Both the position numbers and the translations under genes were made by a program. 64,000 nt of DNA from NCBI GenBank assembly GCA_051294905.1, contig CM119377.1, positions 4,650,001 through 4,714,000 of the forward strand. The letters are read 5' to 3'. The notes under the pieces were generated by a model that saw nothing but the letters and a program-made list of their open reading frames with translations, ran no database searches and was not told where the DNA came from. Positions 492 through 41,766 of this stretch are shown in pieces (position 1 is the stretch's first letter; each line of letters starts with the position of its first letter). Source of the stretch: Botryllus schlosseri (Eukaryota).

Positions 492-3400
492 CTGATGGAA
501 ATGCTCCTTCCTTTTGTAACGTGTCACTAACATCAAACGCAGTCGAGGACAGCAGAATGTCGCCTTTGCTGTGCGGATACAAAGACTCCGTGTGACCATC
601 GTGCGATGCTGATTTGAAGCTGTCGTTCAATGTGAAACGGGCAGCGTTTTCAAGCGTTTTAGGAACTTGCGGGCTGTCGGTGTTGTTTTCCGCGTCCTCC
701 ACAAGAATTCCCGAAAGCTTTGTCGCTCTTGCTGTCTTGAGGTCGAGCGATGGAGTGTGGCACTTTGTACATGAGCATGTTGGACGGTGTGCTTTACAAA
801 ACCTAACTTCCTGTGTATTACCTGCTTGACATGCTTCAAGTAGCCTGAGCCATCGTCGCAGGAAAACTGACAGCTCCTGCACGGATACACTTTCAAACCT
901 TTGTGCTTTTTGACTTTGCGCACATGTTTCTTCAAGTTGTCCATGTCACGGCATCTAGAAACGCAATTATCACTTTGCAAAGCCATTGACCGGAGTGCAG
1001 CACACAGCTAGGAGTAGAATCCTTGGCATGAGGGGGTGATGGAAAATGAACAGTTACTTATTAGCTGATAAAGCAACAACTAGTGGGGATTTCATTAATT
1101 GGGAGAAAAACAAACCTCCAGCCGCAGAGGTGGTACTATTTCTCAGAGTCGAGTGGTTATGTTCTAAGACTACCTCCGCACAGTTCAAGCATAACTACTA
1201 TCTCTTCACAATTTGGATACTGAAAAGTAGAACACAGTTGTCTACATCACAGTCACCAATGAAATTGTCATATGAGCCGTGTGAAATAGTCCCAATATCA
1301 CGGGAAGTGAATAATATTTTCGAAGATTTTGTAGCGTCACTTGGATAATCTGAGAAAGTCACAAAGGTACATCTTGTAGATTCAAAAGTAGCCACCTCAG
1401 ATTAACTGCTAACAGTGTCCCGAATCGTCAGCCATAAGTTTTGATACTATGTAGTAATTTTCAACTTTAAGTTGTTTGACATGTCTTGGAAATTGCTACT
1501 TTGCAATTGAGTAGAAATTTACGGTGTTACTTCTACTTGACTACTGAGTAGCAAGCTAGCGACACTGACTACTTTGGCCTGTGGGAATAATTCAAATAAA
1601 TTGGTAACAAACCTGTATTCACAGTACGGACATTTGAAAGGCATTTTCCCAGTATGTTTCACTTTGTGCCTTTTCAACGACTGCGCATTATTGCACGTAA
1701 AATTGCACTTGTCACAGTGATAGGGTTGATCGTAGCTGTGCGACCTATAAACCAAAGCAGACGTGACGTCGAACATATCAAAACGAGACAGAAAACTCCG
1801 TTACTTTTTGTGTCTCTTGAGTAGTTGAGCAGTCCTCGCGCTGTAGCTACACTCGTCACACGTGAATGGTTTTTCACCTACAATTTGAACATCGTCCAAG
1901 TTGGTGGAGACTTATCAAACTAATTGTACTTGATTCTGAGTCTGATATTGACTGTAATGATTCTAATCAAACACTTCATAGATTTTTTCAAAATAGCAGT
2001 ACCAAAGTTATGGGTCCCTACATCACCAACGTTACCAATTTGTTGGTCAACTGCTTCAAAACAGTGCAAGTACCAGGTCAGCCCTGCCTATATATCGATG
2101 CCTGTCAACTCAGCAATTTACCGGGGTTGTAATGACTCTAGAGTTAGACTCGAGTCACGATTTTCTCAAAATATTGAAATGACTCGACTCGAGTCAATCT
2201 GTGTATTGACTCGACTTGGACTCAAGTCATTGCGCATGACTCGAACCAAGTCATATGACTCGGGACTCAGACAGTCAAGACCGGCATTTCATTGTAATTT
2301 CAAAGAACAGTAAAGCAACCACCCTATTGGGATTTCGTCTATTGGTACTGGTTAGGCTTACCATATTTCGGAAATGAAAAAAGAGGACACTTTTTCAGAA
2401 ATTTCAAACAAGCAAAACTGGAGAAGGATTCTCAAAAACAGGTAAAAATTACACCCGCTTCATGATCGGTTGACTAAAAAAAAAAAAAAAAGGTCATCAC
2501 TTCCGCTCAGAGCTCAAAAACACGTTTTTCACTCCACGTTGCTAGCTCAGAGCTGAAATCACCACTTTTCCGTCCGAAATACCCGCCGGAGCTTCACTTC
2601 TGCGCTAATTTGCGGCATATCACTCGCAATTTCCTCTAAATCTTACCTACATTTTCAAAAAAGAGGACAAAATCTCAAAAAAGAGGACAAAAGGGCGTCC
2701 TCCGAGGACACTTTCAAAAAAGTCAAAAAAGAGGACAAATCCTCTTAAAAGAGGACGTATGGTAAGCCTAGTACTGGTACTTGAAAGTGCGACGACAAAC
2801 TTTTTAAAGTGAGGAAAATTAGTATATTATAAATGCGAACCATTGGATATCACCAAACAGAGTTATAAAAGTGGGTTTAACAAGACTATAACTAAAAACT
2901 GAGCAGTCGACACAACAACTTGGACTTGAGTCATAATACCATGACTCGGACACTGCTTGATGACTCGGTGGTGAATTGAAAATGACTCGACTTGACTCGA
3001 GTCAAAACTATAAAAGCAAGATTGACTTGTGACTCAGAGCTTTGTGATTTGGTCACAACCCTGCAATTTACCTGTGTGAATTCTGAAGTGTTCTTTTAAA
3101 TCGTACTCCGTATGGAAGCACGCCTTGCATATCTTGCAAATTTCTGGCCGGAAACCCGTGTGAAAACGCATGTGCCGATCAACAGCAGACTTGGACAAAA
3201 AAGCTTCCCCGCATTCCTGAAGGCGGGTAAATTGACAGCTTAGAATCAACGGCAGAGAAACTGGTGAAAGCAACGAGCACACTACACCAAATAAGCACGA
3301 GTACTCCGTTACTGACCATGACCACCACTGGAGAATTTGTAACAAGTCAATCTACCCAGTCCTTACCGTGCATCTGAAATTTCTCGCCCTCTCATCGGGC

Positions 3401-33979: not shown

Positions 33980-36385
33980 CATCTAACCCATTATAGGACT
34001 AAACCCACGTTGAGTGTACACAAACACACCGCTTTCGGTCCTGGTATATTCCATATTGAACCACAAGAAATCAGAAACTTGAAAACTGTCCTAAAAAAGT
34101 TGAGAAAATACTGTAGTATTATATATTAAAGAACCATCGGTCTAGACAAGAAATCATGTCGACTTACTGAATACGAACGTTGCAATAATGTGTGGATGTA
34201 CAAAAAATGTTATAACATCAATTTCTCTGTAACTCACACATATGCACTTTTCTTTTGCTAAAACACTAATGTAGGCAGACATTGAATTCATGATAAAATC
34301 AATTCAAAGATTGACAAGTATATTATTATTTATAGACACGTCATTTGGTGTAGGGCTAGTCATTAAATAAGGAAAGACAGACACAAGTCTAGCCATCAAT
34401 CAACACTAAAGTAACGTCCATCCTTATACATGTGAGAGGTCATTGATCCAATGTACAACAGCATACCCAACAATACCAGTTTCAATATAGGGTTATCTAA
34501 GGCCGTCAAAAATATCCAAATCTCATTAAGGATTATCCCAATACAGTAGGAATTAAAACAAACCAAGACTTGGGAATTGCACAGTAATTGTAGAGAGGCT
34601 TCAATATCTAGAATAGATGAATCCAAATCCTAAGAAGATTAGTATCCCCTTATTGTTATTATCCAGATATCAATTTCCCAGTATGAGATGTTGGAGCATT
34701 ATGCTTCACCCATGCCACATAAGAAGTGCAAAAGGGTTCACAAACTCTCACATGAGGCTATAAACAATTGAGTTGTAACTAGATGCCATGGATTTCACTG
34801 GATGCCTTACCAAAAACAATATTAAAGACTGAATATATTCAAAGTAAAAGCAGAACCATGTTGAGTGAATGCCACATTTATTACTGTCAGAGCTGTTTGG
34901 CATTTCAGCTTAAATGTCTTTCAGTACTGAAGCCAACACTTTTTGTAGGTTGAAAAACAGCCTGGTCGTTGTGTTCAAGTGTGACTTGTGCTTAAGACAT
35001 GACTATATCGGTGTGCTAACATATTCTCTATTACAAATGCGGGTAAGCGATATATACCAAGGCCATCATCATCACCATGAGTGGGTTCAAAATCATTTCT
35101 CCTCAACAGGCACTGTATTTTCATATACAACCAGTATTCAGCTATTATGTAGTGCTAAATATTGCATCTTTGTTTGAGACCAGACACGTTTTCAGTACCC
35201 TCTCGTTCAATGGTCTATTCACAGCAACGTTAAACTTTGTGTTTATAACTAGAAAGTTTCATCGACGTTAGCTCGAGATACAAAATCTTACCTCTGTTAT
35301 TCTGGTCGCATTTGCACAACACTAATATAAAAGCAAAGATACAAATTCAATGGGTAAAGGGCAAAGAGCAATTCGATAAGATTGCACAATTGTTTCGTTA
35401 TTCATCAGAGGTGATCAAGTTATTGATGCTCGGGTATAAAGGTATGACTTGAAAACACGTCTGAAGCGGTCTTCAAATTATTTGAAATGTGACAGAGAGT
35501 TCAGTTGCGAGGACCGAAAATTGCATGCCATATCTGATTTCGGGAAAGCAGATAGGACAGCTATTATCGCGTAAATGAAGCAAGTAGCGTCAAAATCGGT
35601 CGCACACTTTCAGCAGTTGATCCGACATCACAACTTTCGAAATCGCAAGATGTATCTTCGCGAGTGAAACAACAAATACCGATAAAATCTTTAAATAATC
35701 CTCAGTTACAATTCCTCTCATAGAAGTGATGCAAACTTCTCCCAATAGTCCATTCAAGTTTCCAAAACAAGCGAGTAGTTTTTCCTTAAAAACTGTTAAA
35801 ATATAGGAGAAGTGGACCAAAAACGCAACCACTTGTGCAAGCATTGCAAGTAAGCAAACCCTACATGAGTACTCTGGAAAAGTAGTACCTTGTTACACAC
35901 CACCTTATATCATCAAGCATTAAGTGCTCATCCGTAAATCATTTCACATTAGTATCGGTATGTAAAGCCAAAACAAAACCGCTCGAGCAACAACAGCTGA
36001 CCACCTCTGGCCCAAATTTCTTTACATCCTGCCCCATCATATTTTACAAACCAGTTAAACGGACCGACCCAAAGCATCGTTAAACGAGGGCCAGGAGAGC
36101 GCAGGTACAAACCTACGTCATCCAAGCACTATTCAATATAATCGTAACACGACAAAAAATCTCAAGAACCATATAAAAAGCACAATGAATTTCACTACAT
36201 AGCAACACGTAACGACACTTAAAAAAAATCAGTACAAGAAAGTAAAAAGCAAAAAAACGCAAGGAATGTCCTATCGTATGACTGACAGTTCACCGACGTT
36301 AGCGGTAAAGAGATTCGGCAAGTTCTCTCCGCAGGAAGATTGTGTCTCGGCAGTACCGTTCTCGATACGGATATCCCCATTCAGG

Positions 36386-37078
36386 TCAAGTCGAGGTGAT
36401 AGCCACTGAAAGTGTGACGCTCGCCTCCTGTAGAGACGTCGTCAGACTTTCGGCTGGTCGTTTTTGCGCGATTTTCGAATCCGAAACGACTTGAGACGAA
36501 ACCTCTCTCGTATCGGACGCGGAGAACTTGAAATCTCTCTCCTCTTCGTCCTCCTCATCGTCGCTCTGCGAGGAATCTGCGTCGCCTTCGATGTGCCGCA
36601 TCTCAAAGTCCGTAATGCTAGGCTTGCGAACCAGCGACGCAGACGTCTTCATGAGGATGGTCGACTTCAACTTTTGCTTCGTGTAATCCGATATTGAACC
36701 GGTGCGGTATATTTTTCGGTGCAGCAGCACTCCAGATTTTTCATTATCAACAGATTTTTCCTTATCATCGCTATCCTCAACACACACCGGCATAGAAGAA
36801 GACCGTAGTAACGGCGCTCTGACCCTGCTGGGCACGTGCAGGTGTTTCAAGCGAGGGTCCTCTTTCAAACGTTTGGTGCGGTTTTCTTGCGTTTGGGAAT
36901 CATTTTTCGTCGGCGAACTCAAACCCGACGCTTGACTCTGCGCTGGCGTGATTTTCGTGTACGACTTCTCGCCCGATTTCACGATAGTGACGCCGGCAGC
37001 CGGCGTCTTTCCCTGGTCTTTATCAACGGTGTCGCTTTCATTCGATACATTCACGGTACCATCTGCTGTTTCCTCCAT
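36386..37078 (-). CDS. Intronless 230-aa Ser/acidic-rich protein carrying a Cabin1-type MEF2-binding motif and an LxVP calcineurin-docking-like motif
   Basis: Single ORF with ATG and TGA, in a locally GC-richer stretch. GSISDYTKQKLKSTILMKTSASLVRKPSI (36614-36700) matches the human Cabin1 tail as I recall it ([29 protein letters not shown]). It is followed by SSQ plus an acidic run, and preceded by KHLHVPS. Confidence 0.75.
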   Translation of the reverse strand: MEETADGTVNVSNESDTVDKDQGKTPAAGVTIVKSGEKSYTKITPAQSQASGLSSPTKNDSQTQENRTKRLKEDPRLKHLHVPSRVRAPLLRSSSMPVCVEDSDDKEKSVDNEKSGVLLHRKIYRTGSISDYTKQKLKSTILMKTSASLVRKPSITDFEMRHIEGDADSSQSDDEEDEEERDFKFSASDTREVSSQVVSDSKIAQKRPAESLTTSLQEASVTLSVAITST

Positions 37079-37531
37079 TTGAGATCGCGTATCTTACACG
37101 GTAATAGCTCGGACGCGAGGCATGTTAAGCTAAAATGTGACTGTCAAAATAAACAGTGAAAATCAGAAGCGGTTGATGTATTTAGAGACTCGGAGTTGCT
37201 ACTAGGGTTGAAGTATTATTAACAACATAAATATCTACTCGATAACGAGCAGAGGCGGAAATTTCAAAGACAAACAGAAATCACTGCGTGTAGAAGTAGA
37301 AAATGTACATCTGAACGGTACTTCGTATACGCTGTTTCAAAATGTAGATTTGGTCGACGGGTAGCATATTGCTAGAAGTTAATTGGAGATGCCCATTTTT
37401 GAAACGGCAGGACGCATGATCGATGGCACTACAAATAGGTACAATTTTCAAAAACATATCCAGTACTTTGATACAGTGGCTCTTTGGCCTGGTCGTCACG
37501 ACAATTTCACTCGTATTCAAGCAATGTAAAC

Positions 37532-38599: not shown

Positions 38600-39022
38600 C
38601 TACAGCAGGTGTCTCTGCCCGAAGAATTGCACCTTCCTTTGAAAACTATGCGACTGGATGCGAGTGTTTTTTTCGTAAAACGGATTCATTATGAACTTGA
38701 TGTAGACTTCGTACACCTCGTTGAAAAAGTTCTTGATCCCGTCCTCGTTTTTGACGTCGTGCAACAGCAAAAATCGCATTCCGCTCGCCGTTACAAAGGC
38801 CGAGACAAACCACTCATTAAATTTATCCACCGTCTTCAAATACATATTATTAGTTTTCCACATGTGCTCGTCGACTAGATCCAATGCCGCGTGGGCGATG
38901 AACTGATTCATATGTCTATTATCATCCTTTTTGGCCGCAGCGGCCTTCGGTGTCATTATCTCCTCTTCATACACTGGGTTATCGCTGTGCTCCACGATAA
39001 CAAAATAATAGCTTCCAGGCAT
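38600..39022 (-). CDS. TRAPPC2: Trafficking protein particle complex subunit 2 (sedlin), 140 aa, intronless CDS
   Basis: [19 protein letters not shown]...[69 protein letters not shown] is unmistakably sedlin. The true ATG is at 39022; the ORF-track start at 39055 lies inside a 5'UTR intron (39047-39120). Confidence 0.96.
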
Positions 39023-41163
39023 ATTTATAAGATTAGTCCACACCGGCTGCATCACAAAAATAAAACAGTAAAGGATAGAGCATCCACTCTCTAATACTAA
39101 TCACATCATTGAGTGCTTACTTTGTATATACACCATGATTACACATAGCTTTGCATCACCACTTGTGTGTTCGACTTTATACACAATCTTACAAGTAATG
39201 CAGCGGCCTGTCATAATCAATCGAGCACCAAACATACTTAATAGTACTTTGAAGAAATATACCATACAAGGCATTCCAATTATAGACGTAATAGGAGCCT
39301 TTCAGCATTGTTTATTGTTAAATCATAAGAGGATATGGACAAAAATGGCCGAACATAAGAGTCCATCAAACATCTACAGCCTATTTATAGAATTCAGATA
39401 CATAGCAAGTGAATCGGTTCTATGTAACATAGTGGTCATTATAGAAATGAACACCATCAGCATTGAGATAAATCAGAGGAACACATTTATAAAATCAGCA
39501 ACCAGCACAGCATGAAATACATTGACAGGGTCAAATTGACTGAAATTTACCACATTCAGACCAAAAGTGTATATCTCGAACTCACTCGAGCACTTGGCCA
39601 AGACAGCATTTGGTGGCTGGTCATGCAATATATCAATGAGAAATAGAGAAACATCAACACAACATACCCTAAAATCAAAAGCCGGCCCAAGTTTTCAGGA
39701 CACTTTCCGGGTGGGGTAACAAGAAAATTTTCAGTCAAATTTTAGACGGATGTAGGGTTGCCATGGTGTCAAAGACAATAACTGCGGTGCAAATTTATTT
39801 CTCAAGACTCGTTCTATTTAGAAATCCTTACCACACTATGGGCCTTGATATGTCCAAGCCTTTTAGGTCAGCCACCCTGATTATATGAAAAATTAAGGAA
39901 CTGTAAGCAGTAACAACATATCAAGGATTGGATGAAATTTACGAATTTCTCAGTGTCACACAAAAAACCAGAACACTGTTGGACAGTAAAGCAAATATTA
40001 CAAATCTACCCACCCCTGTAGAAGTACCCTAAGGTAACAGGAGAATTGCATGGAGGGCATTTAACCATAAAGAACCCCCATGTATCGCAATCATACCAGT
40101 ATATTGGTAACAGAAAATATAACATGAAACGCTAGTGAAATGGATATCACACAAAAATTGTAAGGATGCTTCTACGTACACACATTCTGTGCCATATTAA
40201 CCAGAAACGAGTATGTCCTTTTGAACACAGCGTAAAAGGAAGAATTGACAGACCTTCAATTCACATTATTTTATGCTACAACTGCTCTCTGCTTGAATAG
40301 AAAACGAAGATCATTTGCAAGATTCAACATTAAAATAGGTATGGAGCACGGAATGTCGTTATTTTGGCAAGAAACAAAACGAAACAAACTCATCTTACAA
40401 ATTTGATGCAGAGTTAATGACACGAAAAACATGAGTCTTCCACGGAGCAACTAGGGCAATAAACCGGATATTATAGATCACAAATGTGTCATGCTCAGTT
40501 GGAGTCTACCTTGGCAACTCTTAAACGCCTTTTCAGTGATGCCAGTTATCATCAATAATATCACTATATGCACAATCATAATCAAATCACAAAGTGAAAG
40601 TGATCATCCACCGATGAAATTGACTATTCATTTTGAAAAAGTGGAATTGCTCGAGTCGACATTTGAAACCAGGAGTAAATTAAAGGTAAATGTCCAATTT
40701 GGGCATTTCAGCCGTGCTAGCAACACAGTTCTTATCAATTTCATCCTTTCCCGCTGTTAAAAGGGCACTGCGGTATAACTATAATGTCACAATTGAAGAG
40801 TGAGTAAGAAATTTCAGGAAAGAGCCATTTCTCTCCGAGAGTCACCATTTTCAAACTGCAGCAAAATGATTTTCACGAGCGGACTTATTGCACTGCATCA
40901 ATCTCTGTGGTATCAAGGTCTTGCGTGTGTTAGGCTCATATCACTAAAATTCCATCATAACATTGGCTGACATCTATCTGAAATTTGTTCTACGGGTGGT
41001 ACCACATAGATTATTGAAAAGCAATAGGGCCACTCGTGAAAATCGTCCAGCCGTAGTTCGCATACGGTGGCTTTCTGAGGAAATGGCTGACGCCCAAATA
41101 TTTTTAACACTACCAACTTTAATTTGAGACCCCATCATAATCTATAAAATTCAAACAAAAAAT

Positions 41164-41766
41164 TTATTGGATAGTACAGCACCAAGAGTTCATTTTTTTG
41201 GATTGCTTATAAAATGCTTTCGATTGCGTGCTCAAGTCGTCCGATCTCGCGACCAAGTCATCTAACTTTTCGCCGCGTTGCATCAGCGATTCCATAGTGT
41301 CATGCAAAATAATTTTGGTCTCATCGAGTTCATTTTGCACCCGAGTCATCGCGTCGGCGTGTTTCGGGTCTTGATATTTCGAAAGCCACTCTGGCAATTC
41401 CTCGTATTGAATACCGACCGAAGGGCCACTAGGCCAGTCTTTCATAGGCACTTTGGAAGCGAAGTCTTCGCAAACTTTCGACATCATCGTAAACACCACT
41501 CTTCGCGGATATTCATGATCTGAAATCACCACACATCCGAGTCTATCGTCTCTTATAAAGACGTGGCACATGTAGTTCTGTTCCTTGACGGATTGCCTCT
41601 GTCCTACTTGTGTGCGTTCGGCGCACACGGTGGTTGTGAACTTGAGAAATTCAGCCACGCTGGACCGCTGGAAGAATCCGAATTCTGTGACATCCTGCGC
41701 CGATTTTAGCGCGTTGACTTTGGAGTGAGCCTTGAAAACGACAGCAACCGAATAAAGCTTTACCAT
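41164..41766 (-). CDS. YKT6: Synaptobrevin homolog YKT6 (longin R-SNARE), 200 aa, intronless CDS
   Basis: Longin domain (FGFFQRSSV.EF, EYP.RV.F), SNARE motif (VQ.ELDETKIILHDTMESLMQRGEKLDDLV.RS..LS.QSKAFYK) and C-terminal CC-aaX lipidation signal (CCTIQ). Splice acceptor tttcag lies 18 nt upstream of the ATG. Confidence 0.97.
   Translation of the reverse strand: MVKLYSVAVVFKAHSKVNALKSAQDVTEFGFFQRSSVAEFLKFTTTVCAERTQVGQRQSVKEQNYMCHVFIRDDRLGCVVISDHEYPRRVVFTMMSKVCEDFASKVPMKDWPSGPSVGIQYEELPEWLSKYQDPKHADAMTRVQNELDETKIILHDTMESLMQRGEKLDDLVARSDDLSTQSKAFYKQSKKMNSWCCTIQ

What the first reader, a model, noticed from the sequence alone, without database searches (positions are those of the whole stretch)
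36386..37078. Stand-alone 'Cabin1-tail' protein: a calcineurin/MEF2 regulatory module without the Cabin1 body
Seen: an intronless 230-aa low-complexity ORF with, in order, KHLHVPS (aa 78-84), RSSSMP, GSISDYTKQKLKSTILMKTSASLVRKPSI (aa 127-155) and SSQ plus an acidic run. Established (from memory): the last ~90 aa of vertebrate Cabin1/Cain read KLVIPS...PEITVT...[29 protein letters not shown]...[16 protein letters not shown], containing the calcineurin-inhibitory and MEF2-binding helices. Three motifs match in the same order; PEITVT has only a weak counterpart (MPVCVE). Cabin1 is a ~2200-aa TPR protein of the HIRA complex, but no TPR exons are present here, and the upstream same-strand space is occupied by TRAPPC2 and YKT6. 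Inference: a small independent Ca2+/calcineurin-MEF2 repressor, either the pre-fusion ancestor of the vertebrate tail or a fission product. RSSSMP (14-3-3-like) and RKPS (PKA-like) sites suggest phospho-regulated shuttling like class IIa HDACs or MITR.
Basis: partly seen in the sequence, partly recalled or inferred. Interest (0 to 1): 0.82.

Follow-up and report, generated by a model that had tools for sequence, protein, structure and literature searches.

The report
Stand-alone copy of the Cabin1 tail
This sea squirt has a small, conserved, uncharacterised gene that duplicates only the MEF2-binding tail of the large chromatin protein Cabin1, while the intact Cabin1 gene, with its own tail, sits on another chromosome.

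Summary
Window 36386-37078 (minus strand) is an uninterrupted 230-aa ORF. It hits Pfam MEF2_binding above the curated cut-off (33.1 bits against 27) and aligns colinearly with real vertebrate Cabin1 tails.

It is a real gene:
- Seven orthologues of 234-274 aa share the same start and end.
- Synonymous sites are saturated while pN is 0.2-0.25. In the closest pair dN/dS is 0.12 overall and 0.02 over the helix.
- Low-depth reads of correct-strand sense, from a run labelled single-cell RNA-seq, cover the ORF plus about 330 nt of 3'UTR.

The "pre-fusion ancestor or fission product" reading fails. This genome's only Cabin1 (contig C11, 2258 aa, one exon) keeps its own tail, which is 42% identical to the small protein. 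Styela clava also has both genes. An intron after RKPSIT has the same position and phase in the S. clava small gene and in Clavelina Cabin1, which points to a DNA-level partial duplication.

The calcineurin part is not supported. No tunicate tail has PxIxIT. All have RS[ST]S[MV]P and three basophilic-kinase sites instead.

The most likely function is a phospho-regulated MEF2-groove binder that lacks the co-repressor body. The most conserved 3'UTR element is a seed match to this animal's own miR-1.

The parts
36386..37078 (-). Complete single-exon coding sequence (230 aa plus stop) of the stand-alone Cabin1-tail paralogue
   Evidence: ORF. Seven orthologues of 234-274 aa share its start and end. 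dN/dS is 0.12 in the closest pair. It is 42% identical over 141 aa to this genome's own Cabin1 tail, E 8e-25.
36950..36994 (-). aa 29-43, GVTIVKSGEKSYTKI: a conserved beta-hairpin motif also present in tunicate Cabin1 tails (Clavelina KVTIVERGGRTYTRI, own Cabin1 EITTIIQGGKTYTKI). Function unknown.
   Evidence: Alignments. The AlphaFold2 model has strands at 30-35 and 38-43, with pLDDT about 74 for that block.
36827..36874 (-). aa 69-84, KRLKEDPRLKHLHVPS: a basic patch (possible nuclear localisation signal, inferred). It is the counterpart of vertebrate [14 protein letters not shown].
   Evidence: Alignment. It is conserved in the small proteins and in Phallusia and P0008 Cabin1, but degraded in the Cabin1 tails of this genome and S. 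clava.
36788..36805 (-). aa 92-97, RSSSMP: a perfect mode-I 14-3-3 consensus (RSxSxP). It sits in the alignment column where vertebrates have PEITVT.
   Evidence: The pattern scan finds RS[ST]S[MV]P in all 8 stand-alone proteins and all 5 tunicate Cabin1 tails, and in none of the 3 vertebrate tails. Alignment.
36614..36703 (-). aa 126-155: the MEF2-binding amphipathic helix block (TKQKLKSTIL core), flanked by the basophilic-kinase consensus sites IYRTGS and LVRKPS
   Evidence: Pfam PF09047, 33.1 bits. 1n6j_G alignment. Model helix at 131-148. Nearly invariant across orthologues. dN/dS 0.02.
36539..36574 (-). aa 169-180: SSQSD plus an acidic run, the counterpart of vertebrate [16 protein letters not shown]
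   Evidence: Alignments.
36389..36436 (-). aa 215-230, SLQEASVTLSVAITST: a conserved C-terminal motif, the counterpart of the ..V(I/V)TTAGST end of Phallusia, Clavelina and P0008 Cabin1
   Evidence: Invariant columns S215 L216 E218 V221 L223 A226 I227 T228 S229. Alignment.
36050..36385 (-). Inferred 3'UTR (about 330 nt; the end is approximate)
   Evidence: Reads of minus-strand sense from the run labelled single-cell RNA-seq (X21): depth 4.05 at 36051-36250 and 1.48 at 36251-36450. Depth falls to 0.06 upstream of the ATG, at 37051-37250.
36261..36270 (-). GACATTCCTT: the longest element shared by the 3'UTRs of three species. It contains ACATTCC, a 7mer-m8 seed match to miR-1.
   Evidence: It lies at colinear positions 116, 141 and 148 nt after the stop in the window, L010 and L011. 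None of 1000 shuffles reached the observed k-mer sharing. This genome's own mir-1 precursor is confirmed: Rfam RF00103, 47.1 bits against a cut-off of 45.6, with mature sequence UGGAAUGUAAAGAAGUAUGU.
37094..37096 (-). In-frame TAA six codons upstream of the ATG. It closes the reading frame, and the only AG between it and the ATG overlaps it.
   Evidence: Read from the sequence. The orthologues also have in-frame stops 3-46 codons upstream of the same start.
38600..39022 (-). Single-exon TRAPPC2 directly upstream on the same strand. This is a conserved neighbour, not part of the gene.
   Evidence: Pfam Sedlin_N, 167 bits. The same TRAPPC2-then-small-gene order and strand occur in contig L010 from another species.

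Best explanation
The ORF is a complete, independently maintained gene of styelid ascidians. It arose by duplication of only the 3' end of Cabin1 and encodes just the last ~200 residues of an ascidian Cabin1: hairpin motif, basic patch, RSxSxP site, MEF2-binding helix, acidic run and C-terminal motif. Full-length Cabin1, with its own tail, persists elsewhere in the genome. This much is shown. The product is a mostly disordered protein whose one helix most likely docks in the hydrophobic groove of the MEF2 MADS/MEF2 dimer, as the mammalian Cabin1 helix does. Because it lacks the TPR body, through which mammalian Cabin1 recruits mSin3/HDAC, it would act by occupying that groove. That could block co-activators (net MEF2 inhibition, as the isolated mammalian tail fragment does) or compete with Cabin1 and class IIa HDACs. 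The invariant RSxSxP motif and the three hydrophobic-x-R-x-x-S sites bracketing the helix suggest control by basophilic kinases and 14-3-3, rather than by calcineurin docking. A conserved miR-1 seed match suggests the mRNA is cleared where miR-1 is expressed, meaning muscle. All of this is inferred. The window copy has lost all three coding introns still present in S. clava.
For: Gene reality:
- The ORF and its in-frame upstream stop.
- Seven orthologues, colinear from Met1 to the C-terminus.
- Between the window and the other orthologues pS is 0.86-0.94 and pN 0.2-0.25. For P0004/P0005, dN/dS is 0.116 overall and 0.022 for aa 126-175.
- Minus-sense reads from the run labelled single-cell RNA-seq are confined to the ORF and 3'UTR, with no splice joints.

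Paralogy, not fission:
- This genome has exactly two MEF2_binding loci. The second lies inside a 2271-codon open frame on C11, a 2258-aa protein with TPR and MEF2_binding.
- It is the only Cabin1 locus.
- BLASTP of the small protein against the own Cabin1 tail gives 42% identity, E 8e-25.
- S. clava has both cabin-1-like P0015 (2377 aa, with PF09047) and the small gene P0007.
- The small proteins form one clade, support 94/95.

DNA-level duplication:
- A phase-1 intron directly after RKPSIT is shared by the S. clava small gene and Clavelina Cabin1.

MEF2 binding:
- Pfam hit above the cut-off, 1n6j_G alignment, and a TKQKLKSTIL core identical in the small protein and the own Cabin1 tail.
- Model helix at 131-148.
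- This genome's MEF2 N-terminal sequence is close to the canonical metazoan one as I recall it.
- The complex prediction with MEF2 gave weak support. The score was 0.37 and the best control 0.02. In calibration the mark was reached by 51 of 78 solved complexes and 2 of 108 mismatched pairs. A pass at 0.60 or under was seen in only 5 of the 78 solved complexes and in all 4 passing mismatches (of 180). The runs agree in at least 58% of contacts, and the partner's pLDDT is at least 46. A similar complex is solved, so the pass may come from memory.

The tail alone is active:
- Human CABIN1 2156-2220 inhibited MEF2D-driven transcription more effectively than full-length CABIN1 (PMC12434140).
- mSin3 is recruited through the Cabin1 N-terminal region (PMC2193671).

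miR-1:
-. miR-1 represses HDAC4 (PMC2935565). miR-1 and Mef2 are expressed in ascidian muscle (PMC6589888).
Against: - There is no direct binding or functional data, and the complex prediction is only weak support.
- Expression evidence is thin: about 20 reads from 3% of one run labelled single-cell RNA-seq. The bulk RNA run was uninformative.
- The 5' end of the transcript is undefined, so a 5'UTR intron, trans-splicing or an operon with TRAPPC2 is not excluded.
- The timing of the duplication is unresolved. Both tested topologies pass the AU test, with p 0.37 and 0.105.
- Only one of the three S. clava introns has a counterpart in Clavelina Cabin1.
- The miR-1 site was recognised after the fact. 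It is absent from 600 nt downstream of the S. clava gene.
- The flanks of the S. clava and window loci share no other genes, so in-situ intron loss cannot be told apart from replacement by a retrocopy.
Confidence: 0.7

Rival explanations
1. The tail-only protein is real, but its main job is not MEF2 control. The conserved module (hairpin, RSxSxP, helix, C-terminal motif) would serve another partner, for example 14-3-3 or kinase scaffolding, calmodulin (which in mammals competes with MEF2 for the same region), or a chromatin partner of the Cabin1 tail.
For: Several motifs outside the helix are as conserved as the helix and have no known function: the aa 29-43 hairpin and the C-terminal SVAITS motif. 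Calmodulin and MEF2 bind the mammalian tail in a mutually exclusive way (PMC2193671). The complex prediction with MEF2 gave only weak support.
Against: The helix block is the most strongly constrained part (dN/dS 0.02), and it matches the curated MEF2_binding model above the cut-off.
Confidence: 0.2
2. One reading: a pre-fusion ancestor of the vertebrate Cabin1 tail, or a fission product that left Cabin1 without its tail.
For: The small gene keeps some ancestral tail motifs (KRLKEDPxLKHL and the C-terminal motif) better than the styelid Cabin1 tails do. In the free tree it does not group with the styelid Cabin1 tails.
Against: The Cabin1 proteins of this genome, S. clava and Clavelina all carry a MEF2_binding tail, and P0012 and P0008 look like Cabin1 tail fragments too. 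The L014 species has its tail exons downstream of Cabin1 body exons. Vertebrate Cabin1 also carries the tail, so the fusion predates the split between tunicates and vertebrates. Stand-alone copies were found only in S. clava and its closer relatives.
Confidence: 0.03
3. The ORF is the last exon of a larger gene (Cabin1 or another), spliced at the AG at 37093-37094 or at an internal acceptor.
For: An AG lies 15 nt upstream of the ATG. The transcript's 5' end was not mapped.
Against: Cabin1 lies on another contig and ends with its own stop. That AG overlaps an in-frame TAA. All orthologues start at the same Met, with in-frame stops upstream. NCBI models the S. clava gene as a 274-aa protein with the same start. 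Reads from the run labelled single-cell RNA-seq fall to about zero just upstream of the ATG, and no splice joints were seen. In a tunicate, the AG could as well be a spliced-leader acceptor.
Confidence: 0.04
4. A decaying retro-pseudogene or a chance ORF.
For: It has no introns, and it shares no synteny with the S. clava locus.
Against: The frame is intact in every species examined, with saturated synonymous change and strong purifying selection. The 3'UTR contains conserved elements. The TRAPPC2 neighbour is conserved in another species. Many genes in this genome lack introns, including its only Cabin1.
Confidence: 0.02

Closest known systems
C-terminal tail of Cabin1/Cain (calcineurin-binding protein 1, HIRA-complex subunit); Pfam PF09047 MEF2_binding; PDB 1N6J
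   Same: Homologous over essentially its whole length to the last ~200 residues of ascidian Cabin1, and colinear with the last ~90 residues of vertebrate Cabin1. The MEF2-binding helix core TKQKLKSxIL, the SSQ-acidic run and the K(H)L-x-(V/I)PS patch are shared.
   Different: There is no TPR/HIR3 body, so nothing corresponds to the region through which mammalian Cabin1 recruits mSin3 or joins HIRA. It is a separate gene on another chromosome. It lacks the vertebrate PxIxIT motif (PEITVT) and carries RSxSxP at that position, as ascidian Cabin1 tails also do.
MITR/HDRP (the deacetylase-less HDAC9 isoform) and class IIa HDAC N-termini
   Same: The logic is analogous (from established knowledge): a short amphipathic helix that docks in the MEF2 groove, flanked by basophilic-kinase and 14-3-3 consensus sites, in a protein without the large catalytic or scaffold part. 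In vertebrates the related HDAC4 mRNA is a miR-1 target (PMC2935565).
   Different: It is not homologous to the HDACs. MITR is a splice isoform of the parent gene, whereas this is a separate duplicated gene. 14-3-3 binding and shuttling are untested here.
Engineered CABIN1 C-terminal fragment CB15 (residues 2156-2220; PMC12434140)
   Same: A tail-only polypeptide containing the MEF2-binding core. It inhibited MEF2D-dependent transcription without the Cabin1 body.
   Different: CB15 is a laboratory construct of the human protein. The ascidian gene is natural, is longer (230 aa), and carries extra conserved motifs.

Membership tests
Pfam PF09047 MEF2_binding (Cabin1-type MEF2-binding helix) | Match to the curated HMM at or above the gathering score (27 bits) | tested here: met
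   33.1 bits, E 5.3e-8, aa 127-154, HMM positions 7-34 of 35. The six-frame genome search gave 37 bits.
Pfam PF09047 MEF2_binding (Cabin1-type MEF2-binding helix) | Physical binding to the MEF2 MADS/MEF2 dimer | tested here: inconclusive
   Prediction only, and it gave weak support. The score was 0.37 and the best control 0.02. In calibration the mark was reached by 51 of 78 solved complexes and 2 of 108 mismatched pairs. A pass at 0.60 or under was seen in only 5 of the 78 solved complexes and in all 4 passing mismatches (of 180). The runs agree in at least 58% of contacts, and the partner's pLDDT is at least 46. The similar solved complex 1N6J means the pass may come from memory.
Cabin1 / Hir3 (HIRA-complex scaffold) | Long TPR / HIR3 body (about 2000 aa) | tested here: not met
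   The 230-aa protein has only the MEF2_binding hit. The genuine Cabin1 is a separate 2258-aa ORF on C11 with TPR hits.
Cabin1 / Hir3 (HIRA-complex scaffold) | Homology to the Cabin1 C-terminal tail | tested here: met
   42% identity over 141 aa to the own Cabin1 tail, E 8e-25. The six-frame search gave 50% over aa 21-186. Colinear alignment with tunicate and vertebrate tails.
Calcineurin-docking proteins (Cabin1/Cain type inhibitors) | PxIxIT docking motif (vertebrate Cabin1: PEITVT) | tested here: not met
   The regular expression P[^PG][IVLF][^PG][IVLF][TSHEDQNKR] gives 0 hits in all 8 stand-alone proteins and all 5 tunicate Cabin1 tails. PEITVT is found in all 3 vertebrate tails.
Calcineurin-docking proteins (Cabin1/Cain type inhibitors) | LxVP-type second docking motif | tested here: inconclusive
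   LHVP is present in the window protein and P0001 only. It is absent from the other five full-length orthologues. Vertebrates have L(V/F/L)IP at the aligned site.
14-3-3 clients regulated like class IIa HDACs | Mode-I consensus RSxpSxP and basophilic-kinase sites (hydrophobic-x-R-x-x-S) | tested here: met
   RS[ST]S[MV]P, together with LLRSSS, IYRTGS and LVRKPS, is invariant in the small proteins and present in tunicate Cabin1 tails. This is sequence consensus only.
14-3-3 clients regulated like class IIa HDACs | Phosphorylation-dependent 14-3-3 binding and nuclear export | not testable with these tools
   Needs biochemistry and cell imaging.
miR-1 target mRNAs | Conserved 7-8 nt seed match in the 3'UTR, with the miRNA present in the genome | tested here: met
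   ACATTCC lies inside a 10-mer conserved at colinear 3'UTR positions in 3 species, and no shuffle in 1000 reached the observed sharing. mir-1 is in this genome. The site was not found in the S. clava 3' flank.
miR-1 target mRNAs | Repression by miR-1 | not testable with these tools
   Needs a reporter assay with a seed mutant.

The most novel reading that the evidence does not exclude
Styelid ascidians evolved a natural 'decoy' for the MEF2 co-factor groove by duplicating only the Cabin1 tail. The decoy would be wired into a MEF2/miR-1 circuit (miR-1 clears it in muscle, as miR-1 clears HDAC4 in vertebrates) and switched by basophilic kinases and 14-3-3. More broadly, the ancestral chordate Cabin1 tail would be a kinase/14-3-3-regulated MEF2 module, and calcineurin docking (PEITVT) would be a vertebrate innovation that replaced the RSxSxP site at the same position.
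Probability: 0.22. Interest if true: 0.65.

Novelty: new variant of a known kind. Interest (0 to 1): 0.45.

Why it matters
Cabin1's tail has been studied only as part of a 2200-aa scaffold or as an engineered peptide. Here a tail-only gene has been kept under strong selection in a group of chordates, alongside an intact Cabin1. That gives a natural test of what the tail does without the mSin3/HIRA-binding body. The comparison also suggests that the calcineurin-docking motif which gave Cabin1 its name is absent from tunicate tails, which carry a 14-3-3-type site at that position. This can be tested directly and bears on how Ca2+ control of MEF2 evolved. The gene is currently annotated only as 'uncharacterized protein' in S. 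clava.

Tried and rejected
- The exhaustive protein search gave only 9 hits at E <= 0.001. The apparent extra 'small' homologue P0012 turned out to be a tail exon of a normal full-length Cabin1 with introns (L014). P0009 sits on a 1.5-kb contig and is ambiguous, so no stand-alone copy is shown outside S. clava and its closer relatives.
- The tail phylogeny recovers a clade of small genes. It cannot say whether the duplication came before or after the split of the ascidian orders (AU p 0.37 and 0.105), and the long branch of the own Cabin1 tail distorts the tree.
- S. clava Cabin1 (P0015) has no genomic record in the collection, so I could not compare introns within one species.
- The bulk RNA run X23 was unusable: 302 of 325 reads lay only partly on the stretch. 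Contig runs X1 and X15 cover intergenic DNA as well, so they are probably genomic and are not evidence of expression. The many 'RNA?' holders are not counted as evidence for the same reason.
- The ESM Atlas search gave nothing (best score 0.79).
- A MEF2-site scan (YTAWWWWTAR) found only two generic AT-rich matches in the 1.5 kb upstream, so I make no feedback claim.
- No spliced-leader sequence turned up in the orthologue contigs, and there is no canonical AATAAA or ATTAAA in the window's 3'UTR.
- I looked for synteny with the S. clava locus and found none: no TRAPPC2 or YKT6 within 10 kb there, and no other shared ORFs.
- I considered the hairpin motif (AEITIV in some orthologues) and the C-terminal SVAIT motif as displaced PxIxIT sites. 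I dropped the idea because neither fits the consensus.
Full report
OBSERVATION

The window holds an uninterrupted 230-aa ORF at 36386-37078 on the minus strand. The Pfam model MEF2_binding (PF09047) matches aa 127-154 at 33.1 bits, above the curated cut-off of 27. The only PDB hit is the Cabin1 peptide of 1N6J, aligned to aa 126-155.

I retrieved real Cabin1 sequences from vertebrates and other animals and aligned their tails.
- KRLKEDPRLKHLHVPS aligns with [14 protein letters not shown].
- LLRSSSMPV aligns with [10 protein letters not shown].
- GSISDYTKQKLKSTILMKTSASLVRKPS aligns with [28 protein letters not shown].
- The SSQ-acidic runs align with each other.

The same-strand upstream genes are TRAPPC2 and YKT6, each in a single exon.

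IT IS A REAL, INDEPENDENT GENE

A length-restricted search found seven proteins of 146-274 aa (six of them full-length, 234-274 aa). All carry PF09047, and one is 'uncharacterized protein LOC120343564' of the ascidian Styela clava. They align from the same start Met to the same C-terminal ..SVAITS(A/T/V).

An in-frame TAA lies six codons upstream of the window's ATG. The orthologues also have in-frame stops 3-46 codons upstream of their starts.

Selection is strong. Between the window and the other orthologues, synonymous differences are saturated (pS 0.86-0.94) while pN is only 0.2-0.25. In the closest pair (P0004/P0005), dN/dS is 0.116 overall and 0.022 over the helix and SSQ block.

For expression I had one read-laying run. 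The run labelled single-cell RNA-seq (X21) gave reads only of minus-strand sense, as it did over YKT6. Depth was 1-1.6 over the ORF and 4.05 in the 200 nt bin 36051-36250. It fell to 0.06 just upstream of the ATG, and no splice joints appeared. That is what a short unspliced polyadenylated mRNA would give, but it rests on about 20 reads. The other three runs were uninformative.

IT IS A PARALOGUE, NOT AN ANCESTOR OR A FISSION PRODUCT

A search of the whole assembly with PF09047 and with the ORF found exactly one other locus, on contig C11 inside a 2271-codon open frame.

That frame encodes a 2258-aa Cabin1 with N-terminal TPRs. Its best full-length match is S. clava 'cabin-1-like', followed by Cabin1 of Phallusia, Clavelina, mammals, fishes and arthropods. 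It is the only Cabin1 locus in the genome.

It ends with its own tail (..EITTIIQGGKTYTKI..RSASLP..SVSDYTKQKLKSTILMKTSASLVKKPSIT..SSQSEDEEE..). That tail is 42% identical to the small protein over 141 residues, E 8e-25.

S. clava also has both genes (P0015 with PF09047, and P0007). So the tail was already part of Cabin1 before tunicates and vertebrates split, and the small gene is a partial duplicate. The small proteins form one clade (support 94/95), which means a single origin before the split between S. clava and the window's lineage. Whether that origin is older than the ascidian orders cannot be decided: both constrained trees pass the AU test.

No stand-alone copy was found outside this group. 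One candidate, P0012, is a tail exon lying downstream of Cabin1 body exons in an 11-kb contig.

HOW THE DUPLICATE AROSE

In S. clava the small gene has four coding exons. Its second exon ends exactly after ..RKPSIT, with a phase-1 intron in the following Asp codon. Clavelina Cabin1 has an intron at the same position and phase. A processed retrocopy would not inherit an intron, so the original event was a DNA-level duplication of the 3' end of Cabin1.

The window copy, and the copies in L010, L011 and L012, have no coding introns. The flanks of the S. clava and window loci share nothing else. I therefore cannot say whether the introns were lost in place or whether a retrocopy replaced the gene.

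Loss of introns seems common in this genome. Its only Cabin1 is a single 6.8-kb exon, whereas Clavelina's spans 30 kb. TRAPPC2 and YKT6 are single exons. An earlier follow-up in this scan reported an intronless DNMT3 (s1-268356).

After the duplication, the styelid Cabin1 tails diverged more than the small gene did. The own Cabin1 tail has a branch length of 1.95. It has lost the KRLKxDPxLKHL patch and the C-terminal motif, and its MEF2_binding score is 23.3 bits by hmmscan. The small gene keeps all these features.

WHAT IT PROBABLY DOES

The AlphaFold2 model built from the orthologue alignment is mostly disordered (mean pLDDT 53). It has two more confident elements: a hairpin at aa 30-43 and a helix at aa 131-148. 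The helix is the MEF2_binding block.

This genome's MEF2 has an N-terminal sequence close to the canonical metazoan one as I recall it: MGRKKIQISRIGDERNRQ followed by [68 protein letters not shown].

A complex prediction of two copies of MEF2 exon 2 with aa 105-170 of the small protein gave weak support. The score was 0.37 and the best control 0.02. In calibration the mark was reached by 51 of 78 solved complexes and 2 of 108 mismatched pairs. A pass at 0.60 or under was seen in only 5 of the 78 solved complexes and in all 4 passing mismatches (of 180). The runs agree in at least 58% of their contacts, and the partner's pLDDT is at least 46. Because 1N6J is a similar solved complex, the pass may reflect memory. 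I count it as a small addition.

From the literature:
- The calcineurin-binding site maps to residues 2117-2140.
- mSin3 is recruited through the Cabin1 N-terminal region (PMC2193671).
- The isolated fragment 2156-2220 inhibited MEF2D-dependent transcription more effectively than full-length CABIN1 (PMC12434140).

A natural tail-only protein can therefore plausibly inhibit MEF2 by occupying its groove. Equally, it could displace body-bearing co-repressors. The sequence cannot say which.

THE CALCINEURIN CLAIM FAILS THE MOTIF TEST

An explicit PxIxIT pattern finds PEITVT in all three vertebrate tails. It finds nothing in any of the 8 stand-alone proteins or the 5 tunicate Cabin1 tails. At the aligned position every tunicate tail has RS[ST]S[MV]P, a perfect mode-I 14-3-3 consensus, which the vertebrates lack.

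Three hydrophobic-x-R-x-x-S sites (LLRSSS, IYRTGS, LVRKPS) are invariant in the small proteins, and two of them bracket the helix. Vertebrates lack these as well. The LxVP-like LHVP is limited to the window protein and its closest relative.

The 'calcineurin regulatory module' label is not. Whether tunicate tails bind calcineurin in some other way is untested.

A CONSERVED miR-1 SITE

Synonymous sites are saturated, yet the 3'UTRs of the window, L010 and L011 share colinear islands. The longest is the 10-mer GACATTCCTT at 116, 141 and 148 nt after the stop (window 36261-36270). None of 1000 shuffles reached the observed k-mer sharing.

The 10-mer contains ACATTCC, the 7mer-m8 match to the miR-1 seed. 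This genome encodes a mir-1 precursor above Rfam's gathering score, with the canonical mature sequence. The site lies within the stretch covered by the X21 single-cell reads.

In vertebrates, miR-1 represses the MEF2 co-repressor HDAC4 (PMC2935565). In Ciona, miR-1/133 and Mef2 are expressed in muscle (PMC6589888).

I recognised the seed only after seeing the conservation. The site is absent from the 600 nt downstream of the S. clava gene and from the own Cabin1 3' flank. I rate miR-1 targeting at about even odds.

VERDICT

The thing is a lineage-restricted, selectively maintained, tail-only paralogue of Cabin1, a new variant of a known module. The more exciting evolutionary reading (ancestor or fission) is excluded. 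Interest is moderate. It offers a natural test of tail function without the scaffold, and a testable suggestion that calcineurin docking in Cabin1 is specific to vertebrates.

Noticed in passing
G000:C11:12309263-12316039 (L009:763-7539, plus strand): This genome's only Cabin1 gene is a single uninterrupted 2258-codon exon. Clavelina Cabin1 spans about 30 kb with many introns (L013), and another ascidian (L014) has introns in the same region. This is wholesale intron loss, or replacement by a retrocopy, in a 6.8-kb coding sequence.
   Followed up: partly
window 38600-41766, minus strand: YKT6 (41164-41766), TRAPPC2 (38600-39022) and the small gene (36386-37078) are three single-exon genes in a row on one strand. 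The X21 run gives a strong minus-sense 3'-end-like peak (depth 153 at 39051-39250 and 61 at 39251-39450) that stops about 30-60 nt upstream of the TRAPPC2 start codon. This could be a long YKT6 3'UTR abutting TRAPPC2, an operon-like arrangement as in other tunicates. I did not test it further.
   Followed up: no
window 36160-36190, minus strand (3'UTR, about 198-225 nt after the stop): There is a second conserved 3'UTR island, TCATTGTG(C/T)TTTT(T)AT, in the window, L010 and L011. It contains a UUUU(U)AU element that resembles a cytoplasmic polyadenylation element. A third island, (A/C)GGTACT(G/C)C, lies about 30-40 nt after the stop.
   Followed up: no
P0001 and P0002 (both from Logan run SRR25569784): Two distinct full-length versions of the small protein come from the same sequencing run: 234 aa at about 89% identity to the window, and 244 aa at about 67-70%. 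Either the sample mixes species, or that species has two copies. The window's genome has only one.
   Followed up: no
L018 (G000:C2:25545316-25548438), 1386-1710, plus strand: This is the genome's MEF2 gene. The MADS box is split by a 67-nt intron after codon 18 (exon 1 at 1386-1439, exon 2 at 1507-1710). It was the only locus that passed E <= 1e-5 for SRF-TF in the six-frame search, so no separate SRF locus was reported.
   Followed up: no
L019:1451-1529 (G000:C10:25807939-25808017, plus strand): A mir-1 precursor (Rfam RF00103, 47.1 bits) with the canonical mature miR-1 sequence. I did not check whether miR-133 lies next to it, as it does in Ciona.
   Followed up: no
Alignment of Cabin1 tails: Invertebrate and tunicate Cabin1 tails carry conserved motifs that vertebrates lack: the (V/I)T(M/I)V(E/K)xGxxYT(K/R)I hairpin, SAFT, RSxSxP and a C-terminal V(I/V)TTAGST. 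Vertebrates have PEITVT where tunicates have RSxSxP. This suggests the tail's regulatory inputs were rewired in vertebrates.
   Followed up: partly
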